Source: Macrostomum hystrix
Taxonomy: Eukaryota > Animalia > Platyhelminthes
Length of the DNA: 64,000 bases
Reading direction: 5' to 3'
Assembly: GCA_950097015.1 (NCBI GenBank)
Contig: CATNEN010000007.1
Coordinates: forward strand, 4,836,001-4,900,000
Of the stretch, positions 13,421 through 52,101 are shown piece after piece (the stretch's first letter is position 1; the number at the start of each line of letters is the position of its first letter). Both the position numbers and the translations under genes were made by a program. A model generated the notes under the pieces. The model saw nothing but the letters and a program-made list of their open reading frames with translations. It searched no databases and was not told where the DNA came from.

Positions 13421-13920
13421 TCAATGCTTCGGCCCGGCAGTGCACTTGCAGCCCTCGATGCCGTACAAGGTCAGCTGCATGCTGCCGCCGTCTGTGCAGG
13501 CCGCGGTGATGGCCGGCTTGGCTCGGTAGCCCGTCGGGTTGCAGCAGGAGCACTCGCCCATGACCTTGACGGCTCCCTGCGGTCACATTGCCGGCGGTTG
13601 GGGTGGGTGTACATTTAGAATAAACAGTGAGAATTTTCAAATGCTTCGTCTTGAGCGCCAACAATGGCTATGATAAGTATTCTCTCAAAAAGGTAAATTC
13701 AGGTAGTCGGAGGCTAATACAGGGAGACAGTAGCGACTCGAATTTTCTGATTTGGCCGAGAGGCGGCTCGGCGAGCTCACCTGCTCAGTGATGTGCACCG
13801 AGTTGCTGCCGGGGCAGGCGCCGACGCACCGGTCGATGTTGATCGGCGTCACGAATCGGCAGAACCGACCATCGGGCCGCTTGGCCTCCCGAAGCAGCGT
13901 GCTGCCCCGGGCGCAGGCCT
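13421..13920 (-). other. C-terminal cystine knot (CTCK) domain, split over the last two exons
   Basis: ACARG...[19 protein letters not shown]...EQ|[51 protein letters not shown]. This is the CxGxC, CxCC and CxC pattern of VWF/mucin/SSPO CK domains. Confidence 0.85.
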
Positions 13921-16900
13921 TCAGGCTAGCTCTGTAGCAGCAGCCGGCCGCGTCCAGGACCCGTCGAGCTTCCGAACCGGCGGCTCCGGCCAAGGCCTCG
14001 TCAGCCTGCGTGCATGGCGGCACCTCGGACAGTCGCAGTGGCTGGGAAGTCAGCTGGCCGTGCAGGCATTGGCGCTGGCTGCAGTTCGACCTGTCGACAT
14101 CCACCCTGCCGCTGGGCCAGACCTCGCCGTTCACTAGGCAGGTGAAGCAGTCCTGCAGGCTGACGCATTTGCCGCTAGCGTCACGCGCCATACCTGGCTT
14201 GCACTGGCAGCCGGGCCGGCAGTTCGACTGCGGCTGCGCAGCTTCCGGGTGCAGCAGCTGGGCGCAGGTGGTCTCGCAGCGGCCGGTGTCCACGTAGGCA
14301 TCGCTGGGACTGCAGCAGGCGCCCTCGTCACCGAAGCAGTCGGTGCCGCGGCTAGTCGGCCCGACGCACTCCGCACCGCCGTTGGCCGCCGGCGTGGCTA
14401 TCGACCTGAGCGTTAGCGTGGAACGCAGCTGGCATTCATGTTATTCGCTCCCACCTCTAGATCTGTCTCTCTCTTTTGTTTCACTGCCTATGTTGGGCTA
14501 GCTTAGAGGTGAAGTGTTACAGTTCAACTCATGCGATTCACATCTATATGCGCTTATGAAAACCAAAAAGTATTCAGTTTTTTCTCCTATGCGAAAATGC
14601 ATTTGCAAGAGCTCTAGGATTCGCTTAGAAACTCCTGTCGAATGACAGCCTTTTGGTCAAGTAATATAAAAGCTCTTGCACTGAGAGAAAGTGTTCCCGA
14701 CCCCTTTTCCGAACCTTTTCCACCCTTCTCCGACCTCCTTTTGCGCGAGTAACCATTAAACACTTGTGTTTGGGAAACACTTTCACTCGGTAATTTTATA
14801 GTGAGTCTTCATTTTTGTGATTGTTTGCTTTGAGACCGTCTAAATATAATCCGATTGAGAGCATAACATCTAAAGTGAGTGCAACATCAGGAAAAGATAG
14901 TCGATTTCCCACGCCTCCTTATTTCTTAGAAATAGCCGTTTGTAATTGGCCTTTCTGCTAAAGATAACAATTGAAGATAATAAGAATATTCATTAAGCTA
15001 GACATAAATAGAACAGAGGCGAATCGAAAATATTTCAAAGGCACAATGAGATTCAGTCTTCAGGGAAAACACATGCAGAACTCACCTGGTCCATGTCTGC
15101 TTGCCGGAGCCACAGGTGACGTTGCAGCCGCCCACTTTCTGCCATGCCGACCAGACGCAGTCCTGGGCGCAGCTCTTCTCCTCGCAGACAAACTGGCCGC
15201 TGACGCAGGTGCATTTGTTGCAGGCCTTGTTCACCACGGAGCCGGGCGGCATCAGCTGGCTGGAATTATCTGGGTGGGCGCAGCTGCACTCGGCGACGGC
15301 TACGCAGCTGTCAGCCTCGCGGACCTTGTCTCCCGAGCAGCCGCAGCCCTGGACGCAGCCGACGTCCTGGCACTGCTTGTTCGCGCGCACATCAGCGCAG
15401 GTCCGCCAGCACTTAGTGGCGCAGCTGATTAGAGTCTCCGGCCCGGTGCAGACTGTCTCGTTGCATGGCATCAACGTTGGCTCGAACTCGCGATCGCGGC
15501 AGGCCTGGCCACCGTTGGCCGCCGGCCGCAGCACCGGCCTCGTGCGCTGACGCTCCCCGACGCCGCAGCTGGGGTTGCAGGCCGAGCCGACGCAGTTCTT
15601 GACTCGCTCGCTCCAAGCCGACCACTGACCTACCAAACAGTCGACCTTGCACAGCTTGTTGCACGTGATAACCTCGTAGGTGCTCGGACAGGCCTTTCCA
15701 CCGTTAGCCGGTTGCTGGGTGACCTGCCGCAGCTGCAGCTGTCGGCCTGTGGCTGTCGGATTCGTTCCGTCGCACTCAGCGTAACAGGTGCCGTTAGTCC
15801 AGTCAGAGACCTGGCAGTCGACCGGGGGAGCGCAGTCCTGGCGGTTGCACGACTGCTGGTCCAAATCCGTGCGGCCGCTAGCGTCTGGAGCGCAGCTGCG
15901 TGTCTCGTTTGCGCAAAGACGGACGCAGGCGCGGCTCCTTCGTCTGAAGAAGGAAGAAAGAAAAGGCGTGGAATCTTGCAGCAATAAGGGTGCAAATCGT
16001 CACATTGAGGTCATTAAAGCTCGTGGGGCATCACTGTCTGAGTAAATTGAGTGAATTGTACACACGAACGAGGGTCTGACCTGGTGCCAGTGCCACAAGG
16101 TGCGCTGCAGGCGGAGAAGTCAGACCAATCAGACCACTGCGGTGGCGGATTCGATGCATCATCTGGCAGTTTGGGGACGCACTCGCGTCTACCAGTAAAG
16201 TAGCTGCAGTAGCAGATCTCGCATGTGTTGTCAGCTGGAATTGTCTCTCCTGGAGGCACCAGGTTGCCGAACTTGTCGGTGCAGCCAGGACAGCGGCCGG
16301 TGTTGCAAGGCTGCGACTCGGAGGCGTCGCCAAGGCAGGCTCTTCCAGTGCCGCGGCGAATAGTGGCTTGAGCACGAGTTCGCGTGCGAGAGCCGCCATC
16401 GCAGGCCTTGCTGCAGGGCTCCCAATCGCTCCAGGGTCCCCAGGTGCAATCGCAGTTTGCTGTCGGCACGCAGGTAGCGATGCCGTTGACGCAGCGTCCC
16501 TGCGAACAGAGACCGCAGCTGAGCGTCGTGAGGTCGCAGGTGCATTTGTCAGGAGTGACGCAAGTTCGTGCGCTCTCGTCGAACACGAGACCCTGAGCGC
16601 AGAAGCAACCCGTTGAGCAGGCAAGCTGATCCGAGCAAGTCTCGTTTGTCACGTGCCCGCAGGTATACGGACAGGAAGTGGTACTACATGGACGCATCAC
16701 CTTGCCTTCAGAGCAGACTGGCGAAGGGGTGGTTGCTCCGCATGGTTGAATATTGCACAGGGCTGTCTCAGTCGATGCGTCTTCTAATTGGCAGGCACCC
16801 TGAGGGGTTCTTGTGCGCCTCTTGACCCCGGTATTGCATGGCTGAGAGCACTCGGACCAAGCAGACCATTGGCTCCAGAGACAGGGGCAGGCCTGAGTGT

Positions 16901-19900
16901 TGCACAGCTCAAAGTCCTGGGTGGCAAAGTTGGCAAGTTTAGAAGGGAATCTATGTAAAGTAGTAAAAATATGTAAAATATGAGTGTCTTTCGAAGTATT
17001 GTACCTGGAAGTCCCGTGCGCGGCACTGTTCACCTCCAAAGCGAGCAGGAGACGCCACAGTGCGATTGCGATAGCGGACACCAGTGCCACAGGTCGACGA
17101 ACACGAGCCCCACGGCTGCCACTGGCCCCACTGGCAATCGTTCGAGCAATTAGATTTGCTGCAACGAAGCGCACCGTTGCTGCAGCTGCACTGACCACAG
17201 GCAATCCTTATTGTCACACCAGACTCTAACATGTCACCTTCATTTATTTTTTCGACAACAGAAGACAGTCCAGGTGTGCCGTCAAGCTCAACCCACACAA
17301 CGCCAGTGTAGGACTCGGAAAGCTGCAGCTCCCTGGACACATCGCTCATGGACACTAAGCACTCGCAATCGCCACGAGCCAAGCACGCCGGCGGAGTAGC
17401 TAAAATTTATAATATTTTTGCACGATTAATACTGAAATACACAGACAAGAGCGTTGACAATTAACGCTGTTTACTAACTTGGCTCCAACATGAGACAGGT
17501 AGGAGTGACCGAAATTCCAGGAGTTGAAGTCAACACTGCCGAAGTCGCAGTAGTCGTCGTTGGTGGCGTCGTTGTCGACGTCGATGTCGAAGAACTGGTT
17601 GGTGGTGAAGTTGTTGAAGTCGATGTCGTAGTGGTAGTTGGTGGTGTTGTTGTCGACGTCGATGTCGAAGTGGTCGTTGGTGGTGTTGTTGTCGATGTCG
17701 ATGTCGAAGTAGTAGTTGGTGGTGTCGTTGTCGACGTCGATGTCGAAGTAGTAGTTGGTGGTGTTGTTGTCGACGTCGATGTCGAAGTGGTCGTTGGTGG
17801 TGTAGTTGTCGACGTCGATGTCGAAGTAGTAGTTGGTGGTGTTGTTGTCGACGTCGATGTCGAAGTGGTAGTTGTTGGTGGCGTAGTAGTAGACGTTGAT
17901 GTGGAGGTTGACGTTGTAGACGTCGACGTGGTTGTTGTCGGTGGTGTTGTTGTGGTGCTGCTGGTTGTTGTAGACAATCTTGTGTAGCAACCAAGCATGC
18001 TGACCTGAATCGAAACAGGCAGATTGTTTGTATTTCTGTAGCTGATCTTAATTCTGATTCGGTTTGTTCGAATTCCGAGACCACCGATTGACGCACACTC
18101 CACAAAGTTGGCCATGCACACAGAAAGCTCGTCTGGGGTGCTCGCCGACTTCACCAGAGTGAATGTCGAGGTGACGCCAGACGACTCGAACAGTTCGATT
18201 GATGAAATCAGACCCGGAGTGATAGTAATGATGCTGAGCTTTCCGATTGTCGATTGACTTCCATCGTCGCCACTGACATTGAAATCGAAGGTGATGCTCT
18301 CATCCTTGCGCGTTGAAGATGGCGCGCGGTTCACATCTAAGCCGGAAGCTGAAGATGGTCGCAGTAGGCTCAAGTCGGAGACGGGAATGAGACCGACACC
18401 TTGAGTGGAAGAGCTGATTGAAATGTCATTCAGGCCGATCGGACCATTGCTAGCCATGCCATCCTCTTCAAGACAACGAGTCACAGTATTTGTGGTCTTT
18501 GCCAGAATGACTTCAGTTGTTGTCTGAGGCTGTGTTGTAGTCGAAGTCGAAGTCGAAGTAGTGGTCGTAGGTGGTGTTGTTGTCGACGTCGATGTCGAAG
18601 TGGTCGTTGGTGTTGTTGTCGACGTCGATGTTGAAGTCGTTGTAGGAGGTGTTGTTGTCGACGTCGATGTAGACGTGGTGGTAGGTGGTGTTGTCGTTGA
18701 CGTCGATGTTGATGATGTGGTCGTTGTTGGGGGTGTTGTTGTCGATGTCGATGTAGACGTGGTGGTAGGTGGTGTTGTAGTCGACGTCGATGTGGTCGTA
18801 GGTGGTGTTGTTGTCGACGTCGATGTCGAAGTGGTCGTTGGTGTTGTTGTCGACGTCGATGTTGAAGTCGTTGTAGGAGGTGTTGTTGTCGACGTCGATG
18901 TAGACGTGGTGGTAGGTGGTGTCGTTGACGTCGATGTTGATGATGTGGTCGTTGTTGGGGGTGTTGTTGTCGATGTCGTTGAGGTTGAAGTGGTAGTAGT
19001 CGGTGGTGTTGTTGTTGATGATGTGGTCGTTGTTGGTGGTGTTGTAGTTAACGTTGTGGACGTTGTTGACGTCGTTGGTGGCGTCGTTGTTGTCGACGTT
19101 GATGTTGAAGTGGTGGTTGTTGGTGTTGTCGTTGACGTCGATGTTGATGTTGTGGTCGTTGTTGGGGGTGTTGTTGTCGATGTCGATGTAGACGTGGTGG
19201 TAGGTGGTGTTGTAGTCGACGTCGATGTGGTCGTTGGTGGTGTTGTTGTAGTTGACGTTGTGGACGTTGTTGACGTCGTTGGTGGCGTCGTTGTTGTCGA
19301 CGTTGATGTTGAAGTGGTGGTTGTTGGTGTTGTCGTTGACGTCGATGTTGATGTTGTGGTCGTTGTTGGGGGTGTCGTTGTCGATGTCGATGTAGACGTG
19401 GTGGAAGGTGGTGTTGTAGTCGACGTCGATGTGGTCGTTGGTGGTTTTGTTGTCGAGGTCGTTGAGGTTGAAGTAGTAGTAGTCGGTGGTGTTGTTGTTG
19501 ATGTTGTGGTCGTTGTAGGAGGTGTTGTTGTCGACGTCGATGTTGATGTGGTCGTTGTTGGTGGTGTTGTAGTTGACGTTGAGGAAGTTGTTGACGTCGT
19601 TGGTGGCGTCGTCGTTGTCGACGTTGATGTCGTAGTGGTAGTTGGTGGTGTTGTTGTCGACGTCGATGTTGATGTTGTGGTCGTTGTTGGAGGTGTTGTT
19701 GTCGACGTCGATGTTGATGTTGTCGTTGTTGGTGGTGTTGTAGTTGACGTTGTGGACGTTGATGACGTCGTTGGTGGCGTCGTCGTTGTCGACGTTGATG
19801 TCGTAGTGGTAGTTGGTGGTGTTGTTGTCGACGTCGATGTCGAAGTGGTTGTTGTTGGTTGTGTTGTTGTCGTTGTTGACGTACTTGTTGTTGTCGATCT

Positions 19901-22900
19901 TTGCTTGAAGCAGCCGTAGATACCTATCTGGATGTCGACGCTGTTGTTGTCAGTGACGGATGTGTAGTAGATCTCGAAACGTAGCATTTTTGAAACAATG
20001 GACAGGGTGCTCAGGCAGCTCATTAGATCGAGCTTGCAATTTGTGAGGTTGCTTCCGGTGAAATAGTAAGTGTCCCAGTTTAGCTGCGCCAGATTCGGTT
20101 TGTTGTAGACGCGAACAGCTTTAATATCGGAGGTAGAAAATCGTAGCTCAATTCGTCCGATTTCGATTCCTGTACTGCTTTCAGCAGCTGGGTTGACCTC
20201 AATCAGAATATTCTCATTGGGACTGCTAAGCGACTTTGAGTTCGGAATGTTTAAGTTGAATGGAACTGGCGATGACAGACGCAGCTTTTGCAGGTCGCTT
20301 TGTGTGTAGCCAGTTTGTGTTGAACTGATTATCTGGATTTCTGTTGGAGTAACAATATCCGGATTGGAAAGGCCTTCCAGCTCAACGCAAGCCCGACGCG
20401 CAGTAGTTGTGGTCGGCAGAGTTGTTGTAGACGAAGTTGAAGTCGAAGTGGTCGTTGGTGGCGTTGAGGTCGACGTCGATGTCGAAGTGGTCGTTGGTGG
20501 TGTTGTTGTCGACGTCGATGTCGAAGTGGTCGTTGGTGGTGTTGTTGTCGATGTCGATGTCGAAGTAGTAGTTGGTGGTGTCGTTGTCGACGTCGATGTC
20601 GAAGTAGTAGTTGGTGGTGTCGTTGTCGACGTCGATGTCGAAGTGGTCGTTGGTGGTGTAGTTGTCGACGTCGATGTCGAAGTAGTAGTTGGTGGTGTTG
20701 TTGTCGACGTCGATGTCGAAGTGGTAGTTGTTGGTGGCGTAGTAGTAGACGTTGATGTGGAGGTTGACGTTGTAGACGTCGACGTGGTTGTTGTCGGTGG
20801 TGTTGTTGTGGTGCTGCTGGTTGTTGTAGACAATCTTGTGTAGCAACCAAGCATGCTGACCTGAATCGAAACAGGCAGATTGTTTGTATTTCTGTAGCTG
20901 ATCTTAATTCTGATTCGGTTTGTTCGAATTCCGAGACCACCGATTGACGCACACTCCACAAAGTTGGCCATGCACACAGAAAGCTCGTCTGGGGTGCTCG
21001 CCGACTTCACCAGAGTGAATGTCGAGGTGACGCCAGACGACTCGAACAGTTCGATTGATGAAATCAGACCCGGAGTGATAGTAATGATGCTGAGCTTTCC
21101 GATTGTCGATTGACTTCCATCGTCGCCACTGACATTGAAATCGAAGGTGATGCTCTCATCCTTGCGCGTTGAAGATGGCGCGCGGTTCACATCTAAGCCG
21201 GAAGCTGAAGATGGTCGCAGTAGGCTCAAGTCGGAGACGGGAATGAGACCGACACCTTGAGTGGAAGAGCTGATTGAAATGTCATTCAGGCCGATCGGAC
21301 CATTGCTAGCCATGCCATCCTCTTCAAGACAACGAGTCACAGTATTTGTGGTCTTTGCCAGAATGACTTCAGTTGTTGTCTGAGGCTGTGTTGTAGTCGA
21401 AGTCGAAGTCGAAGTAGTGGTCGTAGGTGGTGTTGTTGTCGACGTCGATGTCGAAGTGGTCGTTGGTGTTGTTGTCGACGTCGATGTTGAAGTCGTTGTA
21501 GGAGGTGTTGTTGTCGACGTCGATGTAGACGTGGTGGTAGGTGGTGTTGTCGTTGACGTCGATGTTGATGATGTGGTCGTTGTTGGGGGTGTTGTTGTCG
21601 ATGTCGATGTAGACGTGGTGGTAGGTGGTGTTGTAGTCGACGTCGATGTGGTCGTAGGTGGTGTTGTTGTCGACGTCGATGTCGAAGTGGTCGTTGGTGT
21701 TGTTGTCGACGTCGATGTTGAAGTCGTTGTAGGAGGTGTTGTTGTCGACGTCGATGTAGACGTGGTGGTAGGTGGTGTCGTTGACGTCGATGTTGATGAT
21801 GTGGTCGTTGTTGGGGGTGTTGTTGTCGATGTCGTTGAGGTTGAAGTGGTAGTAGTCGGTGGTGTTGTTGTTGATGATGTGGTCGTTGTTGGTGGTGTTG
21901 TAGTTAACGTTGTGGACGTTGTTGACGTCGTTGGTGGCGTCGTTGTTGTCGACGTTGATGTTGAAGTGGTGGTTGTTGGTGTTGTCGTTGACGTCGATGT
22001 TGATGTTGTGGTCGTTGTTGGGGGTGTTGTTGTCGATGTCGATGTAGACGTGGTGGTAGGTGGTGTTGTAGTCGACGTCGATGTGGTCGTTGGTGGTGTT
22101 GTTGTAGTTGACGTTGTGGACGTTGTTGACGTCGTTGGTGGCGTCGTTGTTGTCGACGTTGATGTTGAAGTGGTGGTTGTTGGTGTTGTCGTTGACGTCG
22201 ATGTTGATGTTGTGGTCGTTGTTGGGGGTGTCGTTGTCGATGTCGATGTAGACGTGGTGGAAGGTGGTGTTGTAGTCGACGTCGATGTGGTCGTTGGTGG
22301 TTTTGTTGTCGAGGTCGTTGAGGTTGAAGTAGTAGTAGTCGGTGGTGTTGTTGTTGATGTTGTGGTCGTTGTAGGAGGTGTTGTTGTCGACGTCGATGTT
22401 GATGTGGTCGTTGTTGGTGGTGTTGTAGTTGACGTTGAGGAAGTTGTTGACGTCGTTGGTGGCGTCGTCGTTGTCGACGTTGATGTCGTAGTGGTAGTTG
22501 GTGGTGTTGTTGTCGACGTCGATGTTGATGTTGTGGTCGTTGTTGGAGGTGTTGTTGTCGACGTCGATGTTGATGTTGTCGTTGTTGGTGGTGTTGTAGT
22601 TGACGTTGTGGACGTTGATGACGTCGTTGGTGGCGTCGTCGTTGTCGACGTTGATGTCGTAGTGGTAGTTGGTGGTGTTGTTGTCGACGTCGATGTCGAA
22701 GTGGTTGTTGTTGGTTGTGTTGTTGTCGTTGTTGACGTACTTGTTGTTGTCGATCTTTGCTTGAAGCAGCCGTAGATACCTATCTGGATGTCGACGCTGT
22801 TGTTGTCAGTGACGGATGTGTAGTAGATCTCGAAACGTAGCATTTTTGAAACAATGGACAGGGTGCTCAGGCAGCTCATTAGATCGAGCTTGCAATTTGT

Positions 22901-40900: not shown

Positions 40901-43900
40901 AGTGCGCGACACGCACTTGTAGGTCTTGCAGCCAATCTTCAGAATGTGACCGGGCAGGTACTCGGTGCCCAGGTAGGTGCACGGACAGTGTGGCTTCTCA
41001 ACGCATGAGCCCTGAAATATTTGATTAGTGCGAGAACAGATTGGTGAGACTGGTTCCGCTTACACCTGTTAGACTAGTTCAGCCTAACACCTGTTAGACT
41101 AGTTCAGCCTTACACCTGTTAGACTGGTTCAGCCTTACACCTGTTAGACTAGTTCAGCCTAACACCTGTTAGACTGGTTCAGCCTTACACCTGTTAGACT
41201 GGTTCAGACTAACACCTGTTAGACTGGTTCAGCCTAACACCTGTTAGACTGGTTCAGCCTTACACCTGTTAGACTGGTTCAGCCTTACACCTGTTAGACT
41301 GGTTCAGCCTTACACCTGTTAGACTGGTTCAGCCTAACACCTGTTAGACTAGTTCAGCCTTACACCTGTTAGACTGGTTCAGCCTTACACCTGTTAGACT
41401 AGTTCAGCCTACGCCTGTTCAATCAGCACAGCAAAGGAGTTCTCACGTCAGACTTCTTGACAAGGTCTCCGGGACAGCCACATCTTCCAGCTTCCGTGAG
41501 GTTGCTGCTGCACTTGTCATAATTGATGCACTTCTGACAGGCTGGCAGGGTTTCCAGGTACACCTGGTCCTTAGGGCAGACAACCTTGTCGGCGCAGGAG
41601 CTGTTGTCGCAGGCGAAGTCGCCATTGGCGCAGGTGCAGTTGGTGCACTGCCGGGTGATGACTGCGCCAGCGCGGTAGACCTTTCCGTCTCGGTTGTACC
41701 TGTCCTGGCAGGTGCACTCTGATTGGCGCACACAGGTGCCGTAGGCGTCGCGGTATTGGTTGTCGTACTGGCAGTCGCAGCCGGGGAAGCAGCCGAGCTC
41801 GCAGATGCTGGTGCTGCCCAGGTCGCTGCACGACGAGCGGCAGGTGCGGGCGCAAATAGTAAACGACCCGCCGCCGCTCATGCAGGACGGAGCTGAAGAG
41901 AAAACGAAACGATTTTGCACCTCCTGGACGTTTGTGGGTCATGAAACACTCACTGTTCCTGGGTCATGAAACACCCCTGTTCCTGGGTCATGAAACACCC
42001 CTGTTCCTGGGTCATGAGACACTCACTGTTCCTGGGTCATGAAATACCCCTGTTCCTGGATCATGAAACACTCACTGTCCCTGGGTCATGAAACACCCAC
42101 TGTTCCTGGGTCATGAAACACCCCTGTTCCTGGGTCATGAGACACTCACTGTTCCTGGGTCATGAAATACCCCTGTTCCTGGATCATGAAACACTCACTG
42201 TTCCTGGGTCTTGAAACACCCCTGTTCCTGGGTCATGTAACACTCACTGTTCCTGGGTCATGAGACACTCACTGTTCCTGGGTCATGAGACACTCACTGT
42301 TCCTGGGTCATGAGACACTCACTGTTCCTGGGTCATGACACACTCACTGTTCCTGGGTCATGAGACACTCACTGTTCCTGGGTCATAAAACACTCACTGT
42401 TCCTGGGTCATGACACACTCACTGTTCCTGGGTCATAAAACACTCACTGTTCCTGGGTCATGACACACTCACTGTTCCTGGGTCATGAAACACTCACTGT
42501 TCCTGGGTCATGAAACACTCACTGTTCCTGGGTCATGACACACTCACTGTTCCTGGGTCATGAGACACTCACTGTTCCTGGGTCATGAGACACTCACTGT
42601 TCCTGGGTCATGAGACACTCACTGTTCCTGGGTCATGAGACACTCACTGTTCCTGGGTCATGAGACACTCACTGTTCCTGTGTCATGAGACACTCACTGT
42701 TCCTGGGTCATGAGACACTCACTGTTCCTGGGTCATGAGACACTCACTGTTCCTGGGTCATGAGACACTCACTGTTCCTGGGTCATGAGACACTCACTGT
42801 TCCTGGGTCATGAGACACTCACTGTTCCTGGGTCATGAGACACTCACTGTTCCTGGGTCATGAGACACTCACTGTTCCTGGGTCATGAAACACTCACTGT
42901 CCCTGGGTCATGAAACACCCACTGTTCCTGGGTCATGAAACACCCCTGTTCCTGGGTCATGAGACACTCACTGTTCCTGGGTCATGAAATACCCCTGTTC
43001 CTGGATCATGAAACACTCACTGTTCCTGGGTCTTGAAACACCCCTGTTCCTGGGTCATGTAACACTCACTGTTCCTGGGTCATGAGACACTCACTGTTCC
43101 TGGGTCATGAGACACTCACTGTTCCTGGGTCATGAGACACTCACTGTTCCTGGGTCATGACACACTCACTGTTCCTGGGTCATGAGACACTCACTGTTCC
43201 TGGGTCATAAAACACTCACTGTTCCTGGGTCATGACACACTCACTGTTCCTGGGTCATAAAACACTCACTGTTCCTGGGTCATGACACACTCACTGTTCC
43301 TGGGTCATGAAACACTCACTGTTCCTGGGTCATGAAACACTCACTGTTCCTGGGTCATGACACACTCACTGTTCCTGGGTCATGAGACACTCACTGTTCC
43401 TGGGTCATGAGACACTCACTGTTCCTGGGTCATGAGACACTCACTGTTCCTGGGTCATGAGACACTCACTGTTCCTGTGTCATGAGACACTCACTGTTCC
43501 TGTGTCATGAGACACTCACTGTTCCTGGGTCATGAGACACTCACTGTTCCTGGGTCATGAGACACTCACTGTTCCTGGGTCATGAAACACCCACTGTTCC
43601 TGGGTCATGAGACACTCACTGTTCCTGGGTCATGAAACACCCACTGTTCCTGGGTCATGAAACACCCCTGTTCCTGGGTCATGAGACACTCACTGTTCCT
43701 GGGTCATGAAATACCCCTGTTCCTGGATCATGAAACACTCACTGTTCCTGGGTCATGAGACACTCACTGTTCCTGGGTCATGAAACACTCACTGTTCCTG
43801 GGTCATGAGACACTCACTGTTCCTGGGTCATGACACACTCACTATTTCTGGGTCATGAAACACTCACTGTTCCTGGGTCATGAAACACTCACTGTTCCTG

Positions 43901-46900: not shown

Positions 46901-49900
46901 GCAGCTCGGCCGCAGTCTTGCTGCAGGAACCCGAGACAAAGGACTGCGCCACCTGCACGGGCGGGGCGATCATGTCCGAGCCCTTTGTGTGCAAGTCGTT
47001 CTCCGTTTTGCCGTCGAAGTTGCCGCACAGGCCTTGGATCTGCGGTCAGTGGGTGGGCGGGTCTTTTCACTCTTTCGATTCCGCTGTCTCCTCAGCCACC
47101 CCAGGTAATCCTTCAGTAGGCTACCGCTGTCTCCTCAGCCTCCCCTGATCCTTCAGTAGGCTACCGCTGTCTCCTCAGCCTCCCCTGATCCTTCAGTAGG
47201 CTTCCGCTGTCTCCTCAGCCTCCCCTGATCCTTCAGTAGGCTTCCGCTGTCTCCTCAGCCTCCCCTGATCCTTCAGTAGGCTTCCGCTGTCTCCTCAGCC
47301 TCCCCTGATCCTTCAGTAGGCTTCCGCTGTCTCCTCAGCCTCCCCTGATCCTTCAGGTCACTTTCGCTGTGTTTTCAGCCTCGCCAGCTAATCCTTCAGG
47401 TGGCTGGCCTTACCTGCTGGCTGAGCAGCTTGGAGCCCTTCAGCTCTACCGTCCGGAAGCCGTCGAAGTACACGGTGAGGTGGTTGCCGATCTGCACCAT
47501 GGCATAGAATGACGTCAGCTGTCGCACCAGAATCTGGTTGCGCACGTTCTCATAGGGCAGCGAGTTTGTGACGTCGATCCCGTCGACAATCACCGACGGT
47601 CGGGTGCCGGCCGCCAGTGTCACCGATTTCAGCTGGACTGTGACGCCGCGGTACTTGACAGTGATCATCTTCGGCAGGTTGACGAACTGCGCATTGGCTG
47701 TGACGGCCAGGAGGTACTCCGGACTGGGCTCCATGGTTACCTGAGAGAGAGTGGAAGGTGAGGCGTCTGGCTTGCCTGATTCCCCTGTTTGTCTCCGGAA
47801 TTGGATTCGAAAAAGGATTTGGGATGTGATTCGGAATGGGATTTGGAATGTGATTCGGAATGTGATTCGGAATAGAATTCTGAATGTGATTCGGAATGTG
47901 ATTCGGAATTTGATTCTAAATGTGATTCGAAATGGGATTCGGAATGTGATTCGGGATGTGATTCTGAATGTGATTCGGAATGGGATTCGGAATGGGATTC
48001 GGAATGTGATTCTGAATGTGATTCGGAATGGGATTCAGAATGTGATTCGGGATGCGATTCGGAATGGGATTTGGAATGTGATTCGGAATGTGATTCGGAA
48101 TGTGATTCGGAATAGGATTCGGGATGTGATTCGGAATAGGATTCAGAATGGGATTCAGAATGGGATTCGGAATGGGATTCGGAATGTGATTCGGAATGGG
48201 ATTCGGAATTCGAAATGAGAATTCGGACCAGGATTCTTGGAATCTGCGGAACTAACTTGAACTTGCAGGCGTGAGTCGTTGGCGGAAGCCACGGGCTGCA
48301 GCAGGGTGTAAGCGCAGCCCATCGGGTTGAAGTCCATGCGAGCTCCGTCGAAGGTGGCGATGTGGCTGCCGGTGATGGAGCACATCTTGGGGCAGTTGGG
48401 GTTGTAGGTGCACTGCCAGCGGCCGTTGGCGCAGTTGCTGCGGGGCGGCAACGAGGAGGGCTTCGGTGAGCGGCCAAAACTAACTCGAACCTCATCTAAA
48501 CAAAATCACAAAAGTTACCAGGTGCTGCAGTCCACCACCAGGTTACTGCCGGGCATGTACTCCACCGAGTTGTAGGTGCACGGGCACTCGTTAGGCCGGA
48601 TGCAGGTGGTCTTGTAGTGCACGTAGCCTGAGCCGCACTTGCACCTGGGGACCATGCTGCTCTCGCAGGAGGCCGACTTCAACTGGTCGTAGTTGGCGCA
48701 GGTTGTGGGACAGGCGCTGGCGCACTCGCTCCAGGTCATCAGTGCCGGGCAGCTCTGGGCTGCACGAGATTTGGAAGGCTTCGCATTGAATAACTTCATT
48801 GCTTCATTGAAGCAATTGAAGCATTGGAGGGATATTCATAACTTCATTGCACCTATGAGCTAGTTCATTAATACCAGTGAGCTTGGTCATGAACACAAAT
48901 AAGCTTGGTTATGAGCTATGAGCCTGGTCATGAACAACCATGATACTGGTCATGAGAAACTATGAGACTGGTTATGAGAAACTATGAGACTGGTTATGAG
49001 AAACTATGAGACTGGTTATGAGAAACTATGAGACTGGTCATGAGAAACTATGAGACTGGTCATGAGAAACTATGAGACTGGTCATGAGAAACTATGAGAC
49101 TGGTCATGAGCAGTTTTTGTCAGGAAGCCGAATCAATGAGCCAATTCCTCTAATTTTCCCACGATGCCCAAACCCTTATGAGCATTGTCATGAATTTCAT
49201 GAGCCAGGTCACTCACGGCACAAGGCGGTGCCGCGCCAGTCAATGCAGATGCCCTCCAGCGAGCACTGGTATGAGTAGGCGCTCAAGTGTGAGCACAGCA
49301 CCGAGGACTTGGCAGCTTCGCTACTCTCTCCTTTCTTGCGCAGGATGCACATGTCCTGGACGCAGCGCTTCACCACCTCGGTGGGGCTGAGCTTGCTGTG
49401 GCACTGGAAGAACACGTTGTTGATCGGGCGGCAGTCGCTCTCGGCGGCCGCCTGGTCGTCAGGGGTCTCGCAGTGGATGGGCACGTTGGCGATGTCTTGG
49501 CACTGCAATCGGGAGGGGTGGAATGTGAAGAGCTGAGCAATCTGTCACGCGGGCTTGGAAACCAAAGAGCAGGTTGAAGGACCTACCGAATCTGATTTCC
49601 ACTGGTTGCCAAACGCCGCAGGATTTGGCGCGGTGCCGAAATCGTTGCTTGAATCGCCGTCATAGTCGCCGCATAGGCCCTTGAGGCCCTGGTTCTTGTG
49701 CTGCGACCGGTCCACCGTCACGAACACGGAGTTGTCGTTGTCCCACTTCAGCCTGACGCCAATGCTGCGCACGGACAGGTAGACATTAACGCCCTTGCGC
49801 TCGACCTTGACGCCGTTCCATTCGTTGGGTTCCGTGTTCTCCTCCAAGGTCACGTTATAGGCCAGGGTGGTTGCGCCGGTGGTGCCAGACAGCCTCAGCA

Positions 49901-52101
49901 CTTGCACATTGTACCCAAGAGCCACGTACTGATTGATGTCATCGAAGCGCATTGTGATTTGCTGCAAAGTGTAGGGCGCGACGGTTTCCACTCAGTGTGA
50001 GTATGGAAAGCACAGGTAGATAACCTCAAAACTTAATTGAAAGATTCTGAGGCTGCAACTGAATAACTAAACAAGATTGAATCCTGCTTCGATACTATCT
50101 TCGGTTAATTCAATACTAGCTACGCTTGCTTCGATACTAGCTACGCTTCTTTCGATACTAGCTACGCTTCTTTCGATACTAGCTACGCTTTCTTCGATAC
50201 TAGCTACGCTTCCTTCGGTTCTAGCAATATATGTGATCCCAACCTTCTTGCAGGTCTCGAACTTGTCGCAGTTGAGCAATGTGATGGTGCTCCACCACTT
50301 CATGGTGGGGTTGGTGCTGCCCGCCAGCAGGTAGGTGCAGCGGCCCTGGTACTCGAAAGTGAGGCCGTCGAATGTGCGGTACGAGTTCGGGCCGTAGCTG
50401 ACGCAGGTATCGAACGGCACCACCTCCACTCCGGTGTTGTTCTTGGCTGAGTGAGGCGAATATTTTGTGTCAGCATTTTTATTTCAGCATATAATGGAAT
50501 ATAGCAGGCCTTTTTAACTGTTAAACAGGATTCTACGACACCTTAGACAAGTTGATCCACCTGTTAGACAGGCCCTGCACTCTAGCACCTGTTAGACAGG
50601 ACTCTACCACTTGTTTGACAGGACAGGACCAACTGTAAGAAAAGACCCTACCACCTGTTAGACAGACTCGACCTCCTGTTCGACAGTCCCATTCACCTGT
50701 TCTATAGGCCCTGTTAGACAGGATTCTACCAACCGTTAGACAGCACTCTACATGTTAGACAAACCCATTGCAAAGCTAACTAGATCAGTTAGCGCACATT
50801 GGGCCAAGGCAATAGCAATGTCACTCACACACGGAGCTGGTCTTGCAGCTCATGCAGCCCTTCTGATAGCCGAAGCTGCCGGTTCCGTCCGAGCAGCAGC
50901 GTCCGAAGGCCACGCGAGTCGAGCCGAAGCCGGACTTCTTTGTCCTGCAGGCGTCATCTGAGTAGCAGTACTGCTCGTTCGGGTTGTTCTTGATGGCTGC
51001 AGCAGCCGAGGGGTTGGTAGGAAAAGTCTTAGACATTTATGAACTACATTAAGAGCATGAGCAGTATTGAGACTTGAGAATCGGACTCACCGTTGAGATC
51101 TTCGTCGCAGTTGGTGCCCAGGTAGTTAGTGGCGCACTGACAGACATTGGGCTGAATGCACTTGCCACCATTCAGGCAGCCGCCCCGGTTCACGAAGCAG
51201 ACCACCGTCTGGCAGTTGTTGCCGTCGTAGCCTTCGCAGCACTGCGTCTTCTCGACGTTGGACAAGCTGAGGAGGGATAAGAAAAATTGGCCTCCTAATT
51301 ATTAATCAGTAGCTAAAACGAGCATATAAATAAGTTCTCATTTTTAAGTTGATGTCAGCATAGACAAATTATAAATTAGGCTACTGCAAGTAGTGCAAAC
51401 TTGCTAAAATGTTTACGAACCTATAGAACACGCAGTCCGGTGTGGCCTTGCTGTAGGCGAAGTCGCGAATGTAGGTCTGCAGAGACAGCTGGCGCTTCTC
51501 GTGAACCGTGCGATTCGCCAAGCCCACCGCGTCCGGCATGATGGGCACCGAGGTCTCGTCTATGGACAAGCCCTGCATGGTCATCTCCACCATGTTGCCG
51601 CAGGAGGAGTTCTTCTCCGTCCGGCGCTGGAAGGATGCGATGCACCAGCCCGAGCGGCCGGTGCTGGACGAGCGGGGAAGGGGCAACAACGGTTTTATAA
51701 TCGAATAAATCAGGGATCGGCAAAGGGTCAATGAGAGAATCCAAAAGAGATGACATATTTCAGAGACGAAACAAGGTAGAGATGAGACAGGGTAGAGTGG
51801 GTGTTGGCAGGGTCGAGGTGCCGGATAGAGGAGCTTCAAGGGACGCATTTGGTCTTTGAAAAAAACGGTTGCGTTGCATTTTCTACTCATGCAGCTGTGA
51901 GTTAAGTGGCTAGCACATCATTATCGATTGAATTTCTATCGCACCAATGCTCAGCACTCACATCGGTGTCTCCTTGATCTTGACATCGGCGGAAGTGCAA
52001 CTGCCACCGTCCAGAGTCAGTAGAAGCAGCAGCAGCAGAGGCAGCATCGGTGCCAGCAGCCGAGTTGTCGTCCACGTCAAGCGCGAACGGCTTTCAACCA
52101 T
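13421..52101 (-). CDS. Giant secreted SCO-spondin-like / mucin hybrid, 28 coding exons, about 8,660 aa
   Basis: Exons: 52101-51962, 51663-51421, 51266-51091, 50996-50829, 50446-50244, 49961-49587, 49502-49217, 48759-48519, 48437-48257, 47740-47414, 47039-46875, 45429-45186, 41892-41447, 41011-40864, 40741-40465, 39837-39296, 38834-38406, 37496-37380, 37134-37015, 36485-36360, 36224-36133, 36048-34227, 33735-17479, 17399-17005, 16916-16081, 15943-15086, 14405-13781, 13576-13421. All junctions are GT..AG with consistent phase; the sum is 25,995 nt. Start is ATG 52101 or the in-frame ATG 52047 ([20 protein letters not shown], signal peptide). Domain order: EMI (..CCEGY), EGF, 3x VWD-C8-TIL, LDLa x5, PTS/discoidin-like module/LDLa, PTS-module array, about 7 TSP1 with TIL/VWC-like, C-terminal cystine knot (RCVGAC...CSCCNP...C..G...I.GCKC). 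Confidence 0.9.
13921..17399 (-). other. TSP1 (about 7) / TIL / VWC-like C-terminal region
   Basis: [97 protein letters not shown] and [17 protein letters not shown], interspersed with TIL-type C..TC...C..GC.C patterns. Confidence 0.85.
17479..33735 (-). other. Giant 16,257-bp coding exon: Thr/Ser/Pro mucin tracts alternating with 13 discoidin-like modules
   Basis: Stop-free frame (5423-aa ORF) bounded by the acceptor gatttcag|CA at 33735 and the donor A|gttagt at 17479. Module order N to C: C(33691-33236), D(33145-32660), B(32470-31991), A(30916-30428), B(30052-29573), A(28219-27731), B(27355-26876), E(25447-24965), A(24187-23699), B(23245-22766), A(21331-20843), B(20389-19910), A(18475-17987). 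Confidence 0.9.
36591..36966 (+). mobile_element. tRNA-derived SINE, copy 2 (intron of the giant gene)
   Basis: ggggttcggtggcaggttaacgcg...gaggtcgattcc head; body homologous to copy 1; ttattattcttatta tail. Confidence 0.8.
37748..38280. repeat. Minisatellite, 20-bp unit tgttatatgagacacctagc, about 26 copies
   Basis: Tandem array directly visible in an intron. Confidence 0.95.
38970..39200 (+). mobile_element. Diverged SINE fragment (copy 5)
   Basis: ctctcgcaccaaggtcc...ggccacatttaattgg...agggctaaccccaatggtacggtg...cagctgtacaca aligns by eye with the SINE body (ctctcgcaccaaggtcc...ggccacatttatttgg...agggccaacctccaaggcacagtg...cagatgtacaca). Confidence 0.5.
39938..40304 (-). mobile_element. 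tRNA-derived SINE, copy 3, inserted in a gggtcgcaacctgttagata minisatellite
   Basis: (taa)n tail at 39938 and head ...aaccgctctgccacagatcccc at 40304. The same about 21-bp repeat lies on both sides (39870-39937 and 40305-40448). Confidence 0.85.
41062..41418. repeat. Minisatellite, 25-bp unit acacctgttagactggttcagcctt, about 14 copies
   Basis: Tandem array directly visible in an intron. Confidence 0.95.
41934..45152. repeat. Minisatellite, 25-bp unit gggtcatga(a/g)acactcactgttcct, about 128 copies, filling a 3.3-kb intron
   Basis: Tandem array directly visible, with 24-bp variants and a higher-order duplicated block (ccctgggtcatgaaacacccac at 42079 and 42901). Confidence 0.97.
46482..46586. 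repeat. 12-bp tandem repeat gggattggaact, about 9 copies
   Basis: Directly visible. Confidence 0.9.
47075..47396. repeat. Minisatellite, 40-bp unit tcccctgatccttcagtaggcttccgctgtctcctcagcc, about 7 copies
   Basis: Directly visible in an intron. Confidence 0.9.
47797..48212. repeat. 12-bp tandem repeat ggaatg(t/g)gattc, about 34 copies
   Basis: Directly visible. It lies between the donor at 48257 and the acceptor at 47740. Confidence 0.9.
48905..49110. repeat. Minisatellite, 22-bp unit tatgagactggt(t/c)atgagaaac
   Basis: Directly visible in an intron. Confidence 0.85.
50110..50222. repeat. 21-bp tandem repeat tcgatactagctacgcttctt, about 5 copies
   Basis: Directly visible in an intron. Confidence 0.85.
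50520..50760. repeat. Degenerate repeat with ccacctgttagaca core
   Basis: The core recurs about 8 times with variable spacers. Confidence 0.6.

What the first reader, a model, noticed from the sequence alone, without database searches (positions are those of the whole stretch)
13421..52101. About 8,660-aa SCO-spondin-like protein with a gel-mucin core
Seen: a fully phase-consistent 28-exon model (SP-EMI-EGF-3x[VWD-C8-TIL]-LDLa x5-PTS-module-LDLa-[PTS/module]n-TSP1/TIL-CTCK), with roughly 3,000 residues of Thr/Ser/Pro. Established: EMI + 3 VWD + LDLa + FA58C + TSP1 + CTCK is the SCO-spondin (Reissner fibre) architecture, whereas VWD-C8-TIL + PTS + CTCK defines gel-forming mucins. Canonical SCO-spondin has no long PTS tracts, and gel mucins lack LDLa/TSP1 arrays. 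Inference: a hybrid polymer-forming glycoprotein, a candidate mucus, adhesive or fibre component, with lectin-like beads spaced along an O-glycan brush. It is conceptually similar to giant flatworm adhesive proteins, but I do not recognise these repeats.
Basis: partly seen in the sequence, partly recalled or inferred. Interest (0 to 1): 0.85.

Follow-up and report, generated by a model that had tools for sequence, protein, structure and literature searches.

The report
Flatworm SCO-spondin-type giant mucin gene
A real, expressed 28-exon flatworm (Macrostomum-type) gene encodes an 8,664-residue secreted protein of the SCO-spondin family whose middle has become a long mucin-like stretch carrying 14 discoidin-like domains; invertebrate proteins of this mixed type have been noted before, so it is a complete new example, not a new kind.

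Summary
On the minus strand, from ATG 52101 to stop 13421, I rebuilt a 28-exon, all GT-AG, phase-consistent model of 25,995 nt (8,664 aa). Spliced contigs in three runs from two studies confirm the last five introns and join the 16.3-kb Thr/Ser/Pro exon to the TSP1 and C-terminal exons. Pfam confirms 3x VWD-C8-TIL, LDLa, TSP1 and TIL, with EGF only weakly. EMI and CTCK are seen only as motifs.

The "unrecognised" repeats are 14 modules of five types. They have no Pfam hit but fold confidently as discoidin/FA58C-like beta-sandwiches (Z 10-12). They sit where vertebrate SCO-spondin carries its FA58C domain.

The closest protein is a fragmentary Macrostomum lignano model. A tree of the VWD2-VWD3 region places it in a spiralian clade that is sister to chordate SCO-spondin, apart from vertebrate gel mucins. 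The gene is not the adhesive Mlig-ap2.

Novelty is moderate. Lang et al. 2016 already noted invertebrate gel-forming mucins that resemble SCO-spondin. Limpet pedal mucus holds matching end fragments. Annelid and gastropod relatives also carry PTS tracts after the LDLa repeats. Another reader in this scan had flagged the same modules, and a probable second copy lies on another piece of this genome.

Function (mucus, glue or fibre) is inferred, not shown.

The parts
51962..52101 (-). Exon 1: ATG and signal-peptide-like N-terminus (basic stretch, then a Leu-rich core)
   Evidence: read from the sequence, no signal-peptide tool was run
51421..51663 (-). Exon 2: Cys-poor EMI-like region
   Evidence: No Pfam hit even at E<=10; splice choice and the spacing in paralog P0005
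51091..51266 (-). Exon 3: CC-x-GY-x-G-x-x-C motif (EMI end) and an EGF-like domain
   Evidence: EGF_2 E 8e-4, below its cut-off
50829..50996 (-). Exon 4: Cys-rich linker with no family
   Evidence: no hit
50244..50446 (-). Exon 5: VWD1, first part
   Evidence: PF00094 E 5e-8
49587..49961 (-). Exon 6: VWD1, last part
   Evidence: PF00094 E 5e-10
49217..49502 (-). Exon 7: C8-1
   Evidence: PF08742 E 2e-15
48519..48759 (-). Exon 8: TIL-1
   Evidence: PF01826 E 6e-9
48257..48437 (-). Exon 9: VWD2, start
   Evidence: PF00094 E 1e-4; P0001 alignment
47414..47740 (-). Exon 10: VWD2, middle
   Evidence: 90% identical to P0001
46875..47039 (-). Exon 11: VWD2, end (GLCGNFDG)
   Evidence: 88% identical to P0001
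45186..45429 (-). Exon 12: C8-2
   Evidence: PF08742 E 5e-4, below its cut-off; 96% identical to P0001
41447..41892 (-). Exon 13: TIL-2 and a following Cys-rich part
   Evidence: PF01826 E 1e-6
40864..41011 (-). Exon 14: Cys-rich link before VWD3
   Evidence: 90% identical to P0001
40465..40741 (-). Exon 15: VWD3, start
   Evidence: PF00094 E 1e-15
39296..39837 (-). Exon 16: VWD3 end and C8-3
   Evidence: PF00094 and PF08742
38406..38834 (-). Exon 17: TIL-3 and LDLa1
   Evidence: PF01826 and PF00057
37380..37496 (-). Exon 18: LDLa2
   Evidence: PF00057 E 4e-11
37015..37134 (-). Exon 19: LDLa3
   Evidence: PF00057 E 5e-8
36360..36485 (-). Exon 20: LDLa4
   Evidence: PF00057 E 2e-8
36133..36224 (-). 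Exon 21: first two thirds of LDLa5
   Evidence: matches P0001 across both junctions
34227..36048 (-). Exon 22: end of LDLa5, PTS tract (308 aa), module C (34531-35025), short PTS, LDLa6
   Evidence: One open frame
17479..33735 (-). Exon 23: giant 16,257-nt exon with modules A1, A2, then B/C/D modules alternating with 12 PTS tracts (13-aa unit, 39-bp period)
   Evidence: The 3' end is spliced to exon 24 in contigs of X1, X5 and X6
33230..33691 (-). Module A1 (single copy)
32654..33145 (-). Module A2 (single copy)
31985..32470 (-). Module B. Other copies: 29567-30052, 26870-27355, 22760-23245, 19904-20389
   Evidence: DNA copies 99.8-100% identical; AF2 pLDDT 84, discoidin-like fold Z 10-11.8
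30422..30916 (-). Module C. Other copies: 34531-35025, 27725-28219, 23693-24187, 20837-21331, 17981-18475
   Evidence: DNA copies 99.8-100% identical; AF2 pLDDT 86.7, discoidin-like fold Z 10-11.9
24959..25447 (-). Module D (single copy)
17005..17399 (-). Exon 24: VWC/FnI-like part and TSP1-1
   Evidence: PF00090 E 2e-11; both introns confirmed by contigs
16081..16916 (-). Exon 25: TSP1, TIL, TSP1, VWC-like, start of another TSP1
   Evidence: introns confirmed
15086..15943 (-). Exon 26: TSP1 repeats, TIL, start of another TSP1
   Evidence: introns confirmed
13781..14405 (-). Exon 27: TIL, VWC-like part, first half of the cystine-knot pattern (C-x-G-x-C)
   Evidence: PF01826; pattern read; introns confirmed
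13421..13576 (-). Exon 28: second half of the cystine-knot pattern (C-x-CC-x-P ... C-x-C) and the stop codon; contigs run on into the 3' UTR
   Evidence: no Pfam hit for the exon alone

Best explanation
This is the SCO-spondin-family gene of a Macrostomum-type flatworm, and its middle has turned into a gel-mucin core.

Shown here:
- One 28-exon gene, transcribed, with the giant Thr/Ser/Pro exon spliced to the TSP1 and C-terminal exons.
- Domain order: signal peptide, EMI-like region, EGF, 3x VWD-C8-TIL, five LDLa, PTS, discoidin-like module, LDLa, 13 more discoidin-like modules separated by PTS tracts, about 7 TSP1 with 3 TIL, then a cystine-knot-like end.
- Its closest relatives are SCO-spondins.

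Inferred from what is established for VWF, gel mucins and SCO-spondin:
- The protein is secreted.
- It pairs tail-to-tail through the cystine knot and joins head-to-head through the VWD assemblies, giving long disulfide-linked polymers.
- The roughly 3,300-residue PTS tracts are densely O-glycosylated and stiffen into a hydrated brush.
- The 14 discoidin-like domains act as spaced protein- or glycan-binding nodes that cross-link the strands, the role CysD domains play in MUC2/MUC5.

Most likely product: an extracellular mucus or thread material of epidermal or gland origin, used for gliding, protection or attachment. The near-identical 2.7-2.9-kb module-plus-PTS units show the core grew by very recent tandem duplication or is kept uniform by gene conversion.
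For: - Gene model.
- Spliced contigs, 0-2 mismatches, across five GT-AG introns from 17651 to below 13400, in X1, X5 and X6 (two studies).
- Domains.
- Exon 22 carries an LDLa end, PTS, module C and LDLa6 in one open frame, and it starts in mid-LDLa, so the PTS and modules belong to the LDLa-bearing protein.
- The giant exon has no start codon with a signal peptide of its own.
- Module fold: pLDDT 86.7 and 84.2; VIA-align Z 10-12, rmsd about 3 A over 124-138 of 165 residues, against neuropilin b1/b2, DDR1/2, factor VIII C1 and C2, retinoschisin, discoidin I/II and CBM32. Language-model neighbours include F5/8C clusters.
- All five module types keep a first and last Cys, as eukaryotic discoidin domains do.
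- Pigeon SCO-spondin has an LDLa cluster, then F5_F8_type_C, then more LDLa, the same position as the modules here.
- SCO-spondin hits score 580-720 bits at 94-100% coverage; gel mucins, otogelin and VWF score 300-460 bits at about 65-80% coverage; FCGBP-type hits reach 545 bits but cover as little as 36%.
- Tree: spiralian clade 99*, sister to chordate SCO-spondin 98*, joint clade 99*.
- Literature: SCO-spondin-like proteins in limpet pedal mucus with the same ends (VWD x3 + LDLa x5; TSP1 x4 + CTCK), PMC7333891. Invertebrate mucins similar to SCO-spondin, PMC4948705. Macrostomum makes Gal-beta1-3-GalNAc O-glycans on a secreted giant protein, PMC6410801.
Against: - No read evidence was obtained for the 22 upstream introns; the reads tool allowed one call. 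They rest on canonical sites and on M. lignano protein models, which are themselves predictions.
- The tree used the M. lignano ortholog (90-96% identical) as proxy, because exons were not joined.
- EMI and CTCK were not confirmed by any profile.
- The modules have no sequence-level match to FA58C: Pfam finds nothing at E<=10 and hhalign finds nothing. Common descent from the SCO-spondin FA58C domain is therefore an inference from fold and position.
- No CGLC-type vicinal cysteines precede the GLCG motifs of the three VWD domains (read). The meaning of this for multimerisation was not tested.
- Tissue, secretion, glycosylation and polymer state are all untested.
- The number of near-identical repeat units depends on the assembly.
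Confidence: 0.7

Rival explanations
1. It is a dedicated glue component of an adhesive or cement gland: a paralog-level relative of the Macrostomum adhesive Mlig-ap2, with the discoidin modules binding the substrate or a partner protein. It would not be general mucus.
For: Mlig-ap2 has the same overall layout (VWD, TIL and LDLa at the N-terminus, a huge repeat core, TSP1 at the C-terminus) and carries mucin-type O-glycan (PMC6410801). Macrostomum holds a second SCO-spondin-like gene about 51% identical in the N-terminal part (P0005/P0032). Discoidin and VWD domains recur in sea-star Sfp1 and other temporary adhesives, and SCO-spondin-like proteins occur in limpet adhesive mucus (PMC7333891).
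Against: It is not Mlig-ap2 itself. None of six tested Mlig-ap2 mass-spectrometry peptides occurs in the window, and the core here is PTS plus 162-165-aa modules, not the 255- and 221-aa repeats. The adhesive-organ studies I read name only ap1 and ap2. No tissue data were available.
Confidence: 0.18
2. It does the canonical SCO-spondin job: it forms an internal extracellular thread, like Reissner's fibre, made by a few neural or sensory-associated cells. The PTS tracts would be a lineage-specific elaboration.
For: Placement in the SCO-spondin clade and the shared VWD, LDLa, discoidin, TSP1/TIL and cystine-knot order.
Against: As far as I know, no Reissner-fibre-like structure is described in flatworms. 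The transcript contig has a mean word depth of 111 in a run whose contigs total only 47 Mb. That is hard to reconcile with a handful of cells, although depth is a poor measure. Only about 7 TSP1 repeats are present, against about 25 in vertebrates. The spiralian relative that has been localised, in limpet, is in the pedal sole (PMC7333891).
Confidence: 0.06
3. The model is partly an artefact. The number of repeat units may be inflated or collapsed by assembly of 99.9%-identical 2.9-kb units, or the main transcript may stop after exon 22, where intron retention gives a stop about 49 codons on. In that case the 8,664-aa product is not the main form.
For: Units are 99.9% identical and module copies 99.8-100% identical. 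Contigs break inside the PTS tracts and show back-joins there (tables 5 and 8). The exon 22 to exon 23 junction has no read support here.
Against: The frame stays open over 16.3 kb with no stop. The unique modules A1, A2 and D interrupt the repeats in a fixed order. The giant exon is transcribed and spliced at its 3' end and cannot be translated as a secreted protein without upstream exons. The M. lignano model also links LDLa5 to modules C and A1.
Confidence: 0.06

Closest known systems
SCO-spondin (SSPO), the Reissner-fibre glycoprotein of chordates, and its predicted spiralian orthologs
   Same: N-terminal Cys-rich/EGF part, 3x VWD-C8-TIL, an LDLa cluster, a discoidin-type domain set among the LDLa repeats, TSP1 alternating with TIL, and a cystine-knot-like end. 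It gives the best-scoring full-coverage homologs and shares a clade with this gene's ortholog.
   Different: This gene has about 3,300 residues of PTS; 14 highly diverged discoidin-like modules instead of the single F5_F8_type_C stretch Pfam finds in the vertebrate fragments checked; only about 7 TSP1 repeats; an EMI region that no profile recognises; and a 16.3-kb single exon.
Invertebrate SCO-spondin-like gel-forming mucins (Lang et al. 2016, PMC4948705), and the predicted proteins of Paralvinella (P0045) and Gigantopelta (P0122)
   Same: VWD-C8-TIL and LDLa, followed by a Cys-bounded beta-rich module ending in '..C-[YF]-E-P' and then PTS tracts, with LDLa repeats interspersed. They fall in the same spiralian clade.
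   Different: Those database entries are truncated predictions without the far end. Their modules show no detectable sequence similarity to the modules here. None shows a 14-module array.
Limpet pedal-mucus proteins P-vulgata_3 and P-vulgata_6 (Kang et al. 2020, PMC7333891)
   Same: P-vulgata_3 has VWD x3, C8, TIL and LDLa x5. P-vulgata_6 has TSP1 x4 and CTCK. These are the two ends of the architecture seen here, found in an external adhesive mucus and localised to the pedal sole.
   Different: They were reported as two separate partial proteins with no mucin core. That they are ends of one gene is my suggestion, not shown.
Vertebrate gel-forming mucins (MUC2, MUC5AC, MUC5B, MUC6, MUC19)
   Same: An N-terminal triple VWD-C8-TIL, a very long central PTS region broken by small Cys-containing globular domains, and a C-terminal cystine knot. 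The presumed polymer logic is the same.
   Different: A separate clade. They have CysD (WxxW) domains instead of discoidin-like modules, and no LDLa or TSP1. This gene has no fourth VWD.
Macrostomum lignano adhesion protein 2 (Mlig-ap2, 14,794 aa; Wunderer et al. 2019, PMC6410801)
   Same: Same genus-level lineage. VWD, TIL and LDLa at the N-terminus, a giant tandem-repeat core, TSP1 at the C-terminus, and mucin-type O-glycan.
   Different: Its core is 46 repeats of 255 or 221 aa with a basic pI, not PTS plus discoidin modules. Its peptides are absent from this window.
Insect hemolectin/hemocytin and sea-star Sfp1
   Same: VWD-C8-TIL units combined with F5/8 type C (discoidin) domains in secreted clot or glue proteins.
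   Different: Hemolectin has a 3+2 VWD layout with no LDLa/TSP1 arrays and at most a very small PTS region (PMC4948705). The firefly and bivalve mucin-like proteins form a different clade.

Membership tests
SCO-spondin (SSPO) | N-terminal EMI domain | tested here: inconclusive
   No Pfam hit for exon 2 or 3 at E<=10. Only the closing CC-x-GY-x-G-x-x-C motif is present, and the region has fewer Cys than paralog P0005. The domain spans two exons and the joined search was left out.
SCO-spondin (SSPO) | Three VWD-C8-TIL units | tested here: met
   PF00094, PF08742 and PF01826, three sets. C8-2 scores below its cut-off.
SCO-spondin (SSPO) | Cluster of LDL-receptor class A repeats after the third VWD unit | tested here: met
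   Four LDLa by Pfam. LDLa5 (exons 21/22) and LDLa6 (exon 22) by pattern and by match to P0001.
SCO-spondin (SSPO) | F5/8 type C (discoidin) domain within the LDLa region | tested here: inconclusive
   Fold and position agree. PF00754 and hhalign against a rotifer SCO-spondin FA58C give nothing.
SCO-spondin (SSPO) | TSP1 repeats alternating with TIL-type modules | tested here: met
   About 7 TSP1 and 3 TIL in exons 24-27. This is far fewer than in vertebrates.
SCO-spondin (SSPO) | C-terminal cystine knot (CTCK) | tested here: inconclusive
   The Cys pattern is present across exons 27/28. There is no Pfam hit exon by exon. The joined search was left out.
SCO-spondin (SSPO) | Groups with SCO-spondins in a tree of VWD proteins | tested here: met
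   By proxy, using the M. lignano ortholog P0001 (90-96% identical): SH-aLRT 99 for the joint clade with chordate SCO-spondin, quick IQ-TREE search. Ranking agrees.
SCO-spondin (SSPO) | Forms Reissner's fibre in the central canal | not testable with these tools
   No tissue or protein data.
Vertebrate-type gel-forming mucin | Triple N-terminal VWD-C8-TIL plus a long central PTS region | tested here: met
   3,321 residues lie in tracts that are at least 80% P/T/S.
Vertebrate-type gel-forming mucin | CysD (Mucin2_WxxW) domains inside the PTS region | tested here: not met
   No such Pfam hit. The interspersed modules are discoidin-like.
Vertebrate-type gel-forming mucin | Fourth VWD and VWC before the cystine knot, and membership of the mucin clade | tested here: not met
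   No VWD after the PTS region. The vertebrate mucin clade is separate at 100*.
Vertebrate-type gel-forming mucin | Dense O-glycosylation and gel formation | not testable with these tools
   Inferred from composition only.
Discoidin / F5_F8_type_C domain (for the 14 modules) | Match to the family profile PF00754 | tested here: not met
   No hit at E<=10 for any of the five types.
Discoidin / F5_F8_type_C domain (for the 14 modules) | Galactose-binding-domain-like beta-sandwich, with N- and C-terminal cysteines placed to close the domain | tested here: met
   Z 10-12, with top hits almost all discoidin, CBM32 or neuropilin-b; TM 0.6 in the Atlas. C1 and C163 are invariant. The disulfide itself was not checked.
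Mlig-ap2 adhesive protein | Core of 255- and 221-aa repeats and its known peptides | tested here: not met
   Peptides absent from all six frames. The core is different.
Hemolectin/hemocytin | 3+2 VWD layout around the F5_F8 domains | tested here: not met
   Only three VWD domains. The firefly and bivalve mucin-like clade is separate.

The most novel reading that the evidence does not exclude
The ancestral bilaterian SCO-spondin was an external thread- or gel-forming mucin with discoidin cross-linking nodes, and the flatworm and other spiralians still use it that way. Reissner's fibre would then be a chordate internalisation of a mucus thread. The Macrostomum-specific C-x6-C helix inserted in each discoidin module would be a new disulfide or metal cross-linking device, doing the job of CysD.
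Probability: 0.2. Interest if true: 0.7.

Novelty: new member of a known kind. Interest (0 to 1): 0.45.

Why it matters
This is a complete gene model, partly confirmed by transcripts, for a spiralian SCO-spondin-type mucin. Database entries for this group, including the M. lignano ortholog, are truncated because the repeat core does not assemble or gets mis-predicted.

It supports the idea that SCO-spondin and gel mucins share a polymer design, and that SCO-spondin's discoidin domain can be multiplied into a bead-on-brush array.

For flatworm biology, Macrostomum is a laboratory model with RNAi and in situ methods. The gene offers unique probe targets (modules A1, A2, D) and peptides to test whether this protein makes gliding mucus, glue or a fibre. 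It also suggests that the two SCO-spondin-like fragments in limpet mucus are ends of one such gene.

The kind itself has already been noted in the literature, so the surprise for a specialist is moderate.

Tried and rejected
- Word-based homolog search with the giant exon (modules A1/A2; length class 2,984-9,495 aa): no hit. No full-length relative of that size is in the collection.
- Profile of the five module types against 1.84 billion representatives: only two hits. One is the M. lignano fragment P0001. The other is a weak 189-aa protein (E 3e-4) from an unidentified eukaryotic metagenome contig that carries tandem module-plus-short-PTS exons.
- Pfam on the modules at E<=10: nothing.
- hhalign of the module profile against the rotifer SCO-spondin FA58C region and against the Gigantopelta and Paralvinella modules: probabilities below 1%.
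- Identity with Mlig-ap2: rejected.
- Look-up of the contig encoding P0001: not on record.
- Literature search for the M. lignano gene and protein identifiers: nothing.
- EMI by Pfam: nothing.
- Considered and rejected: a plus-strand reading of the repeat region. The 450-aa plus-strand ORFs are mirror frames of the repeats, and all five confirmed introns are GT-AG on the minus strand.

Full report
**What is in the sequence**

The window has ordinary composition except for 17-36 kb, where G strongly exceeds C on the plus strand. There the minus strand carries one open frame of more than 5,420 codons, at 33754-17477. Its product is 40% Thr, 19% Ser and 10% Pro. Non-repetitive Cys-containing segments of about 160 aa interrupt it.

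Upstream and downstream on the same strand lie short open pieces rich in cysteine. Pfam, run piece by piece and by reference, gives:
- an EGF-like match (below its cut-off);
- three sets of VWD, C8 and TIL;
- four clear LDLa repeats;
- after the giant frame, TSP1 (PF00090/PF19028) and three more TIL.

**Gene model**

I built the model from stop-free pieces, canonical GT/AG sites and frame arithmetic. Where available, I also used the alignment of a related protein.

The result is 28 exons from ATG 52101 to stop 13421-13423. Every intron is GT..AG, phases are consistent and there is no internal stop. The CDS is 25,995 nt, giving 8,664 aa and about 900 kDa of peptide with 327 Cys.

Exon 23 is 16,257 nt. 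Exon 22 (1,822 nt) holds the end of LDLa5, a 308-residue PTS tract, one module and a sixth LDLa, all in a single frame.

The exons were never joined into one sequence for any search or fold.

**Transcript evidence**

The run search found eight runs holding 11-74% of the sampled words of 13400-17500. I laid four of them on 13400-19399, which is 6,000 letters.

In X1, X5 and X6 (two studies), a single contig of 3.1-3.6 kb runs from 17632/17651 inside the giant exon to beyond 13400. It skips exactly five stretches whose ends read CT..AC on the plus strand, which is GT..AG on the minus strand. The introns these joints define, after shifting three of them by 1-2 bases to the canonical ends, are the same five introns as in my model.

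X5 and X6 match the window with 0-1 mismatches. So these runs contain spliced RNA, the giant PTS exon is transcribed, and it is joined to the TSP1 and C-terminal exons. A faint unspliced contig (depth 2.9 against 111) lies in intron 26.

It is supported in four ways:
- Exon 22 begins in the middle of an LDLa domain.
- The giant exon lacks a start codon with a signal peptide of its own.
- The junctions E11/E12 to E20/E21 reproduce the residue sequence of the M. lignano protein A0A1I8GJ02 (P0001) across each joint.
- The spacing of conserved cysteines around the first junctions matches the M. lignano paralog P0005.

**The modules**

There are 14 modules of 154-165 aa in five types: A1, A2, B x5, C x6 and D. 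Another reader of this scan counted the same. All types share a first Cys, an LR motif, a C-x6-C pair and a final G-C. They are only 23-38% identical to one another.

No sequence method links them to a known family:
- Pfam finds nothing, even at E<=10.
- A profile search of 1.84 billion representatives finds only the M. lignano fragment and one weak hit.

AlphaFold models of types C and B are confident, with pLDDT 86.7 and 84.2 and pTM 0.85 and 0.83. Foldseek and VIA-align return almost only galactose-binding-domain-like sandwiches: neuropilin b1/b2, DDR1/2, factor V/VIII C domains, retinoschisin, discoidin I/II and CBM32. Z is 10-12, with rmsd about 3 A over 124-138 residues. The ESM Atlas searches agree.

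The C-x6-C pair lies in a short helical insert (model residues 114-127) that I do not recall in canonical discoidin domains; I did not check this against the solved structures.

In a pigeon SCO-spondin fragment the order is LDLa cluster, then F5_F8_type_C, then more LDLa. The modules here sit at the same place. I therefore read them as a diverged and multiplied SCO-spondin discoidin domain. This rests on fold and position only, because hhalign against a rotifer SCO-spondin FA58C region found nothing.

**Repeat structure**

The PTS tracts are built from a 13-aa (39-bp) unit. Module-plus-PTS super-units of 2,856 bp are 99.9% identical, and module copies are 99.8-100% identical at the DNA level. 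This indicates very recent duplication or ongoing homogenisation. It also means the unit count depends on the assembly.

**Whose gene, and which family**

The only close relative in the protein collections is M. lignano "VWFD domain-containing protein" A0A1I8GJ02. It is a 1,680-aa prediction that is 90-96% identical in most of the VWD-LDLa exons and about 75% identical in the modules, and it reads the PTS region in a wrong frame. The window is therefore from a Macrostomum-type flatworm, either a close relative of M. lignano or a second copy in that lineage. Earlier follow-ups on this genome say the same.

I searched with the ortholog's VWD2-to-LDLa part:
- Proteins named SCO-spondin or SCO-spondin-like from rotifers, a mussel, flamingo and alligator, plus unnamed or differently named Pinctada, Dimorphilus and Branchiostoma proteins with the same domain set: 580-720 bits at 94-100% coverage.
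- Gel mucins, otogelin and VWF: 300-460 bits at about 65-80% coverage, with no LDLa.
- FCGBP-type hits: up to 545 bits, but covering as little as 36%.

I built a maximum-likelihood tree of the VWD2-VWD3 region (45 rows, 660 columns, LG+C20, quick search):
- The four Macrostomum sequences fall in a spiralian clade with molluscs, annelids and rotifers (SH-aLRT 99).
- That clade is sister to amphioxus plus vertebrate SCO-spondin (98).
- The joint clade has support 99.
- Vertebrate gel mucins (100) and a hemolectin-like invertebrate group (97) are separate.

Caveats: the search was quick, three rows have long branches, and the query row is the ortholog, not the window's own joined protein.

**Comparison with what is known**

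The gene is not the adhesive Mlig-ap2. That protein has 46 repeats of 255 or 221 aa, and its mass-spectrometry peptides are absent from all six frames of the window. Macrostomum does have a second SCO-spondin-like gene, P0005/P0032, which is 51% identical. I could not connect it to ap2.

The mixed architecture is not new as a kind:
- Lang et al. [quoted passage not shown]
- Kang et al. 2020 found two relevant proteins in limpet pedal mucus. One is a SCO-spondin-like protein with VWD x3 and LDLa x5, localised to the pedal sole. The other has TSP1 x4 and CTCK. These are the two ends of the present architecture.
- In my own hits, the Paralvinella and Gigantopelta relatives carry a Cys-bounded module followed by PTS tracts and further LDLa after the LDLa cluster.

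What is new here is the complete gene: the single 16-kb exon, the 14-module array of a strongly diverged discoidin type with a C-x6-C insert, and splice-level transcript support.

**How it most likely works**

Shown: the gene, its transcription, the 3' splicing, the domain order, the module fold and the family placement.

Inferred from established knowledge of VWF, gel mucins and SCO-spondin:
- Secretion through the signal peptide.
- Tail-to-tail dimers through the cystine knot, and head-to-head disulfide assembly through the VWD units.
- Dense O-GalNAc glycosylation of the PTS tracts. Macrostomum makes Gal-beta1-3-GalNAc on Mlig-ap2 (PMC6410801).
- Discoidin-like modules acting as spaced binding nodes that cross-link the strands.

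I commit to an external mucus or thread material as the most likely product (about 0.7 together with the identity claim). A gland-specific glue is about 0.18, a Reissner-type internal fibre about 0.06, and a partly artefactual model about 0.06.

**Surroundings**

The gene is bounded by unrelated genes. A WD40-repeat gene lies on the plus strand at about 8.1-10.6 kb. A dynamin-family fragment lies at 272-730 on the minus strand. Upstream of the ATG there is a 1.1-kb CT-rich low-complexity block. Several introns consist largely of minisatellites.

**Verdict**

Novelty is limited to a new, complete member of an already noted kind. Interest is 0.45.

Noticed in passing
window 41935-45153: Intron 12 (3.3 kb) is almost entirely a 25-bp minisatellite, 129 copies at 94% match. 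Further intronic minisatellites: 20 bp x26 at 37750-38280, 25 bp x15 at 41047-41419, 40 bp x7 at 47079-47356, 12 bp x33 at 47816-48209.
   Followed up: no
window 12330-12547, 39931-40139, 55290-55454: Three copies of a short dispersed repeat, seen as near-identical translated strings on the minus strand. One lies downstream of the gene, one in intron 15 and one upstream. Probably a small mobile element.
   Followed up: no
window 52846-53962: About 1.1 kb of strand-asymmetric, A-rich low-complexity repeat (AT skew +0.42 on the plus strand) lies 750 bp upstream of the ATG. It is open in all three minus frames as Cys/Leu/Ser strings.
   Followed up: no
window 8092-10584 (+) and 272-730 (-): Flanking genes unrelated to the finding: WD40-repeat exons on the plus strand, and a dynamin-family N-terminal GTPase fragment on the minus strand at the window edge.
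   Followed up: partly
window 58055-60161: Long ORFs on both strands with weak 'decapeptide repeat' and other low-complexity Pfam matches. Possibly another repetitive secreted-protein gene, or only a simple repeat.
   Followed up: no
L001 2531-4996 (ENA metagenome contig, 7 kb): An unidentified eukaryotic contig carries at least three tandem exon-like ORFs. Each has a short Thr/Pro linker plus a module weakly related to the modules here (E 3e-4), starting with the same C-x-x-D-[DM]-M pattern and ending in G-C, but without the C-x6-C pair. A reverse-transcriptase fragment lies next to them.
   Followed up: partly
proteins P0005 / P0032 (Macrostomum lignano): M. lignano has a second SCO-spondin-like gene, 51% identical over the VWD region and with a complete signal peptide and EMI-like start. 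It forms a Macrostomum-specific sister pair with the ortholog of this gene. Whether it is the N-terminus of Mlig-ap2 could not be settled.
   Followed up: partly
window 13831-19270: Runs labelled organism A and B (X1, X3) hold the same spliced transcript with about 1% differences, while organism C (X5, X6) is identical to the window (table 3). This suggests strain, allele or sibling-species variants.
   Followed up: no
window 14384-14674: Low-depth contigs (2.9 against 111) lie inside intron 26 in X5 and X6. This is a trace of unspliced RNA or of DNA in those runs (table 8).
   Followed up: no
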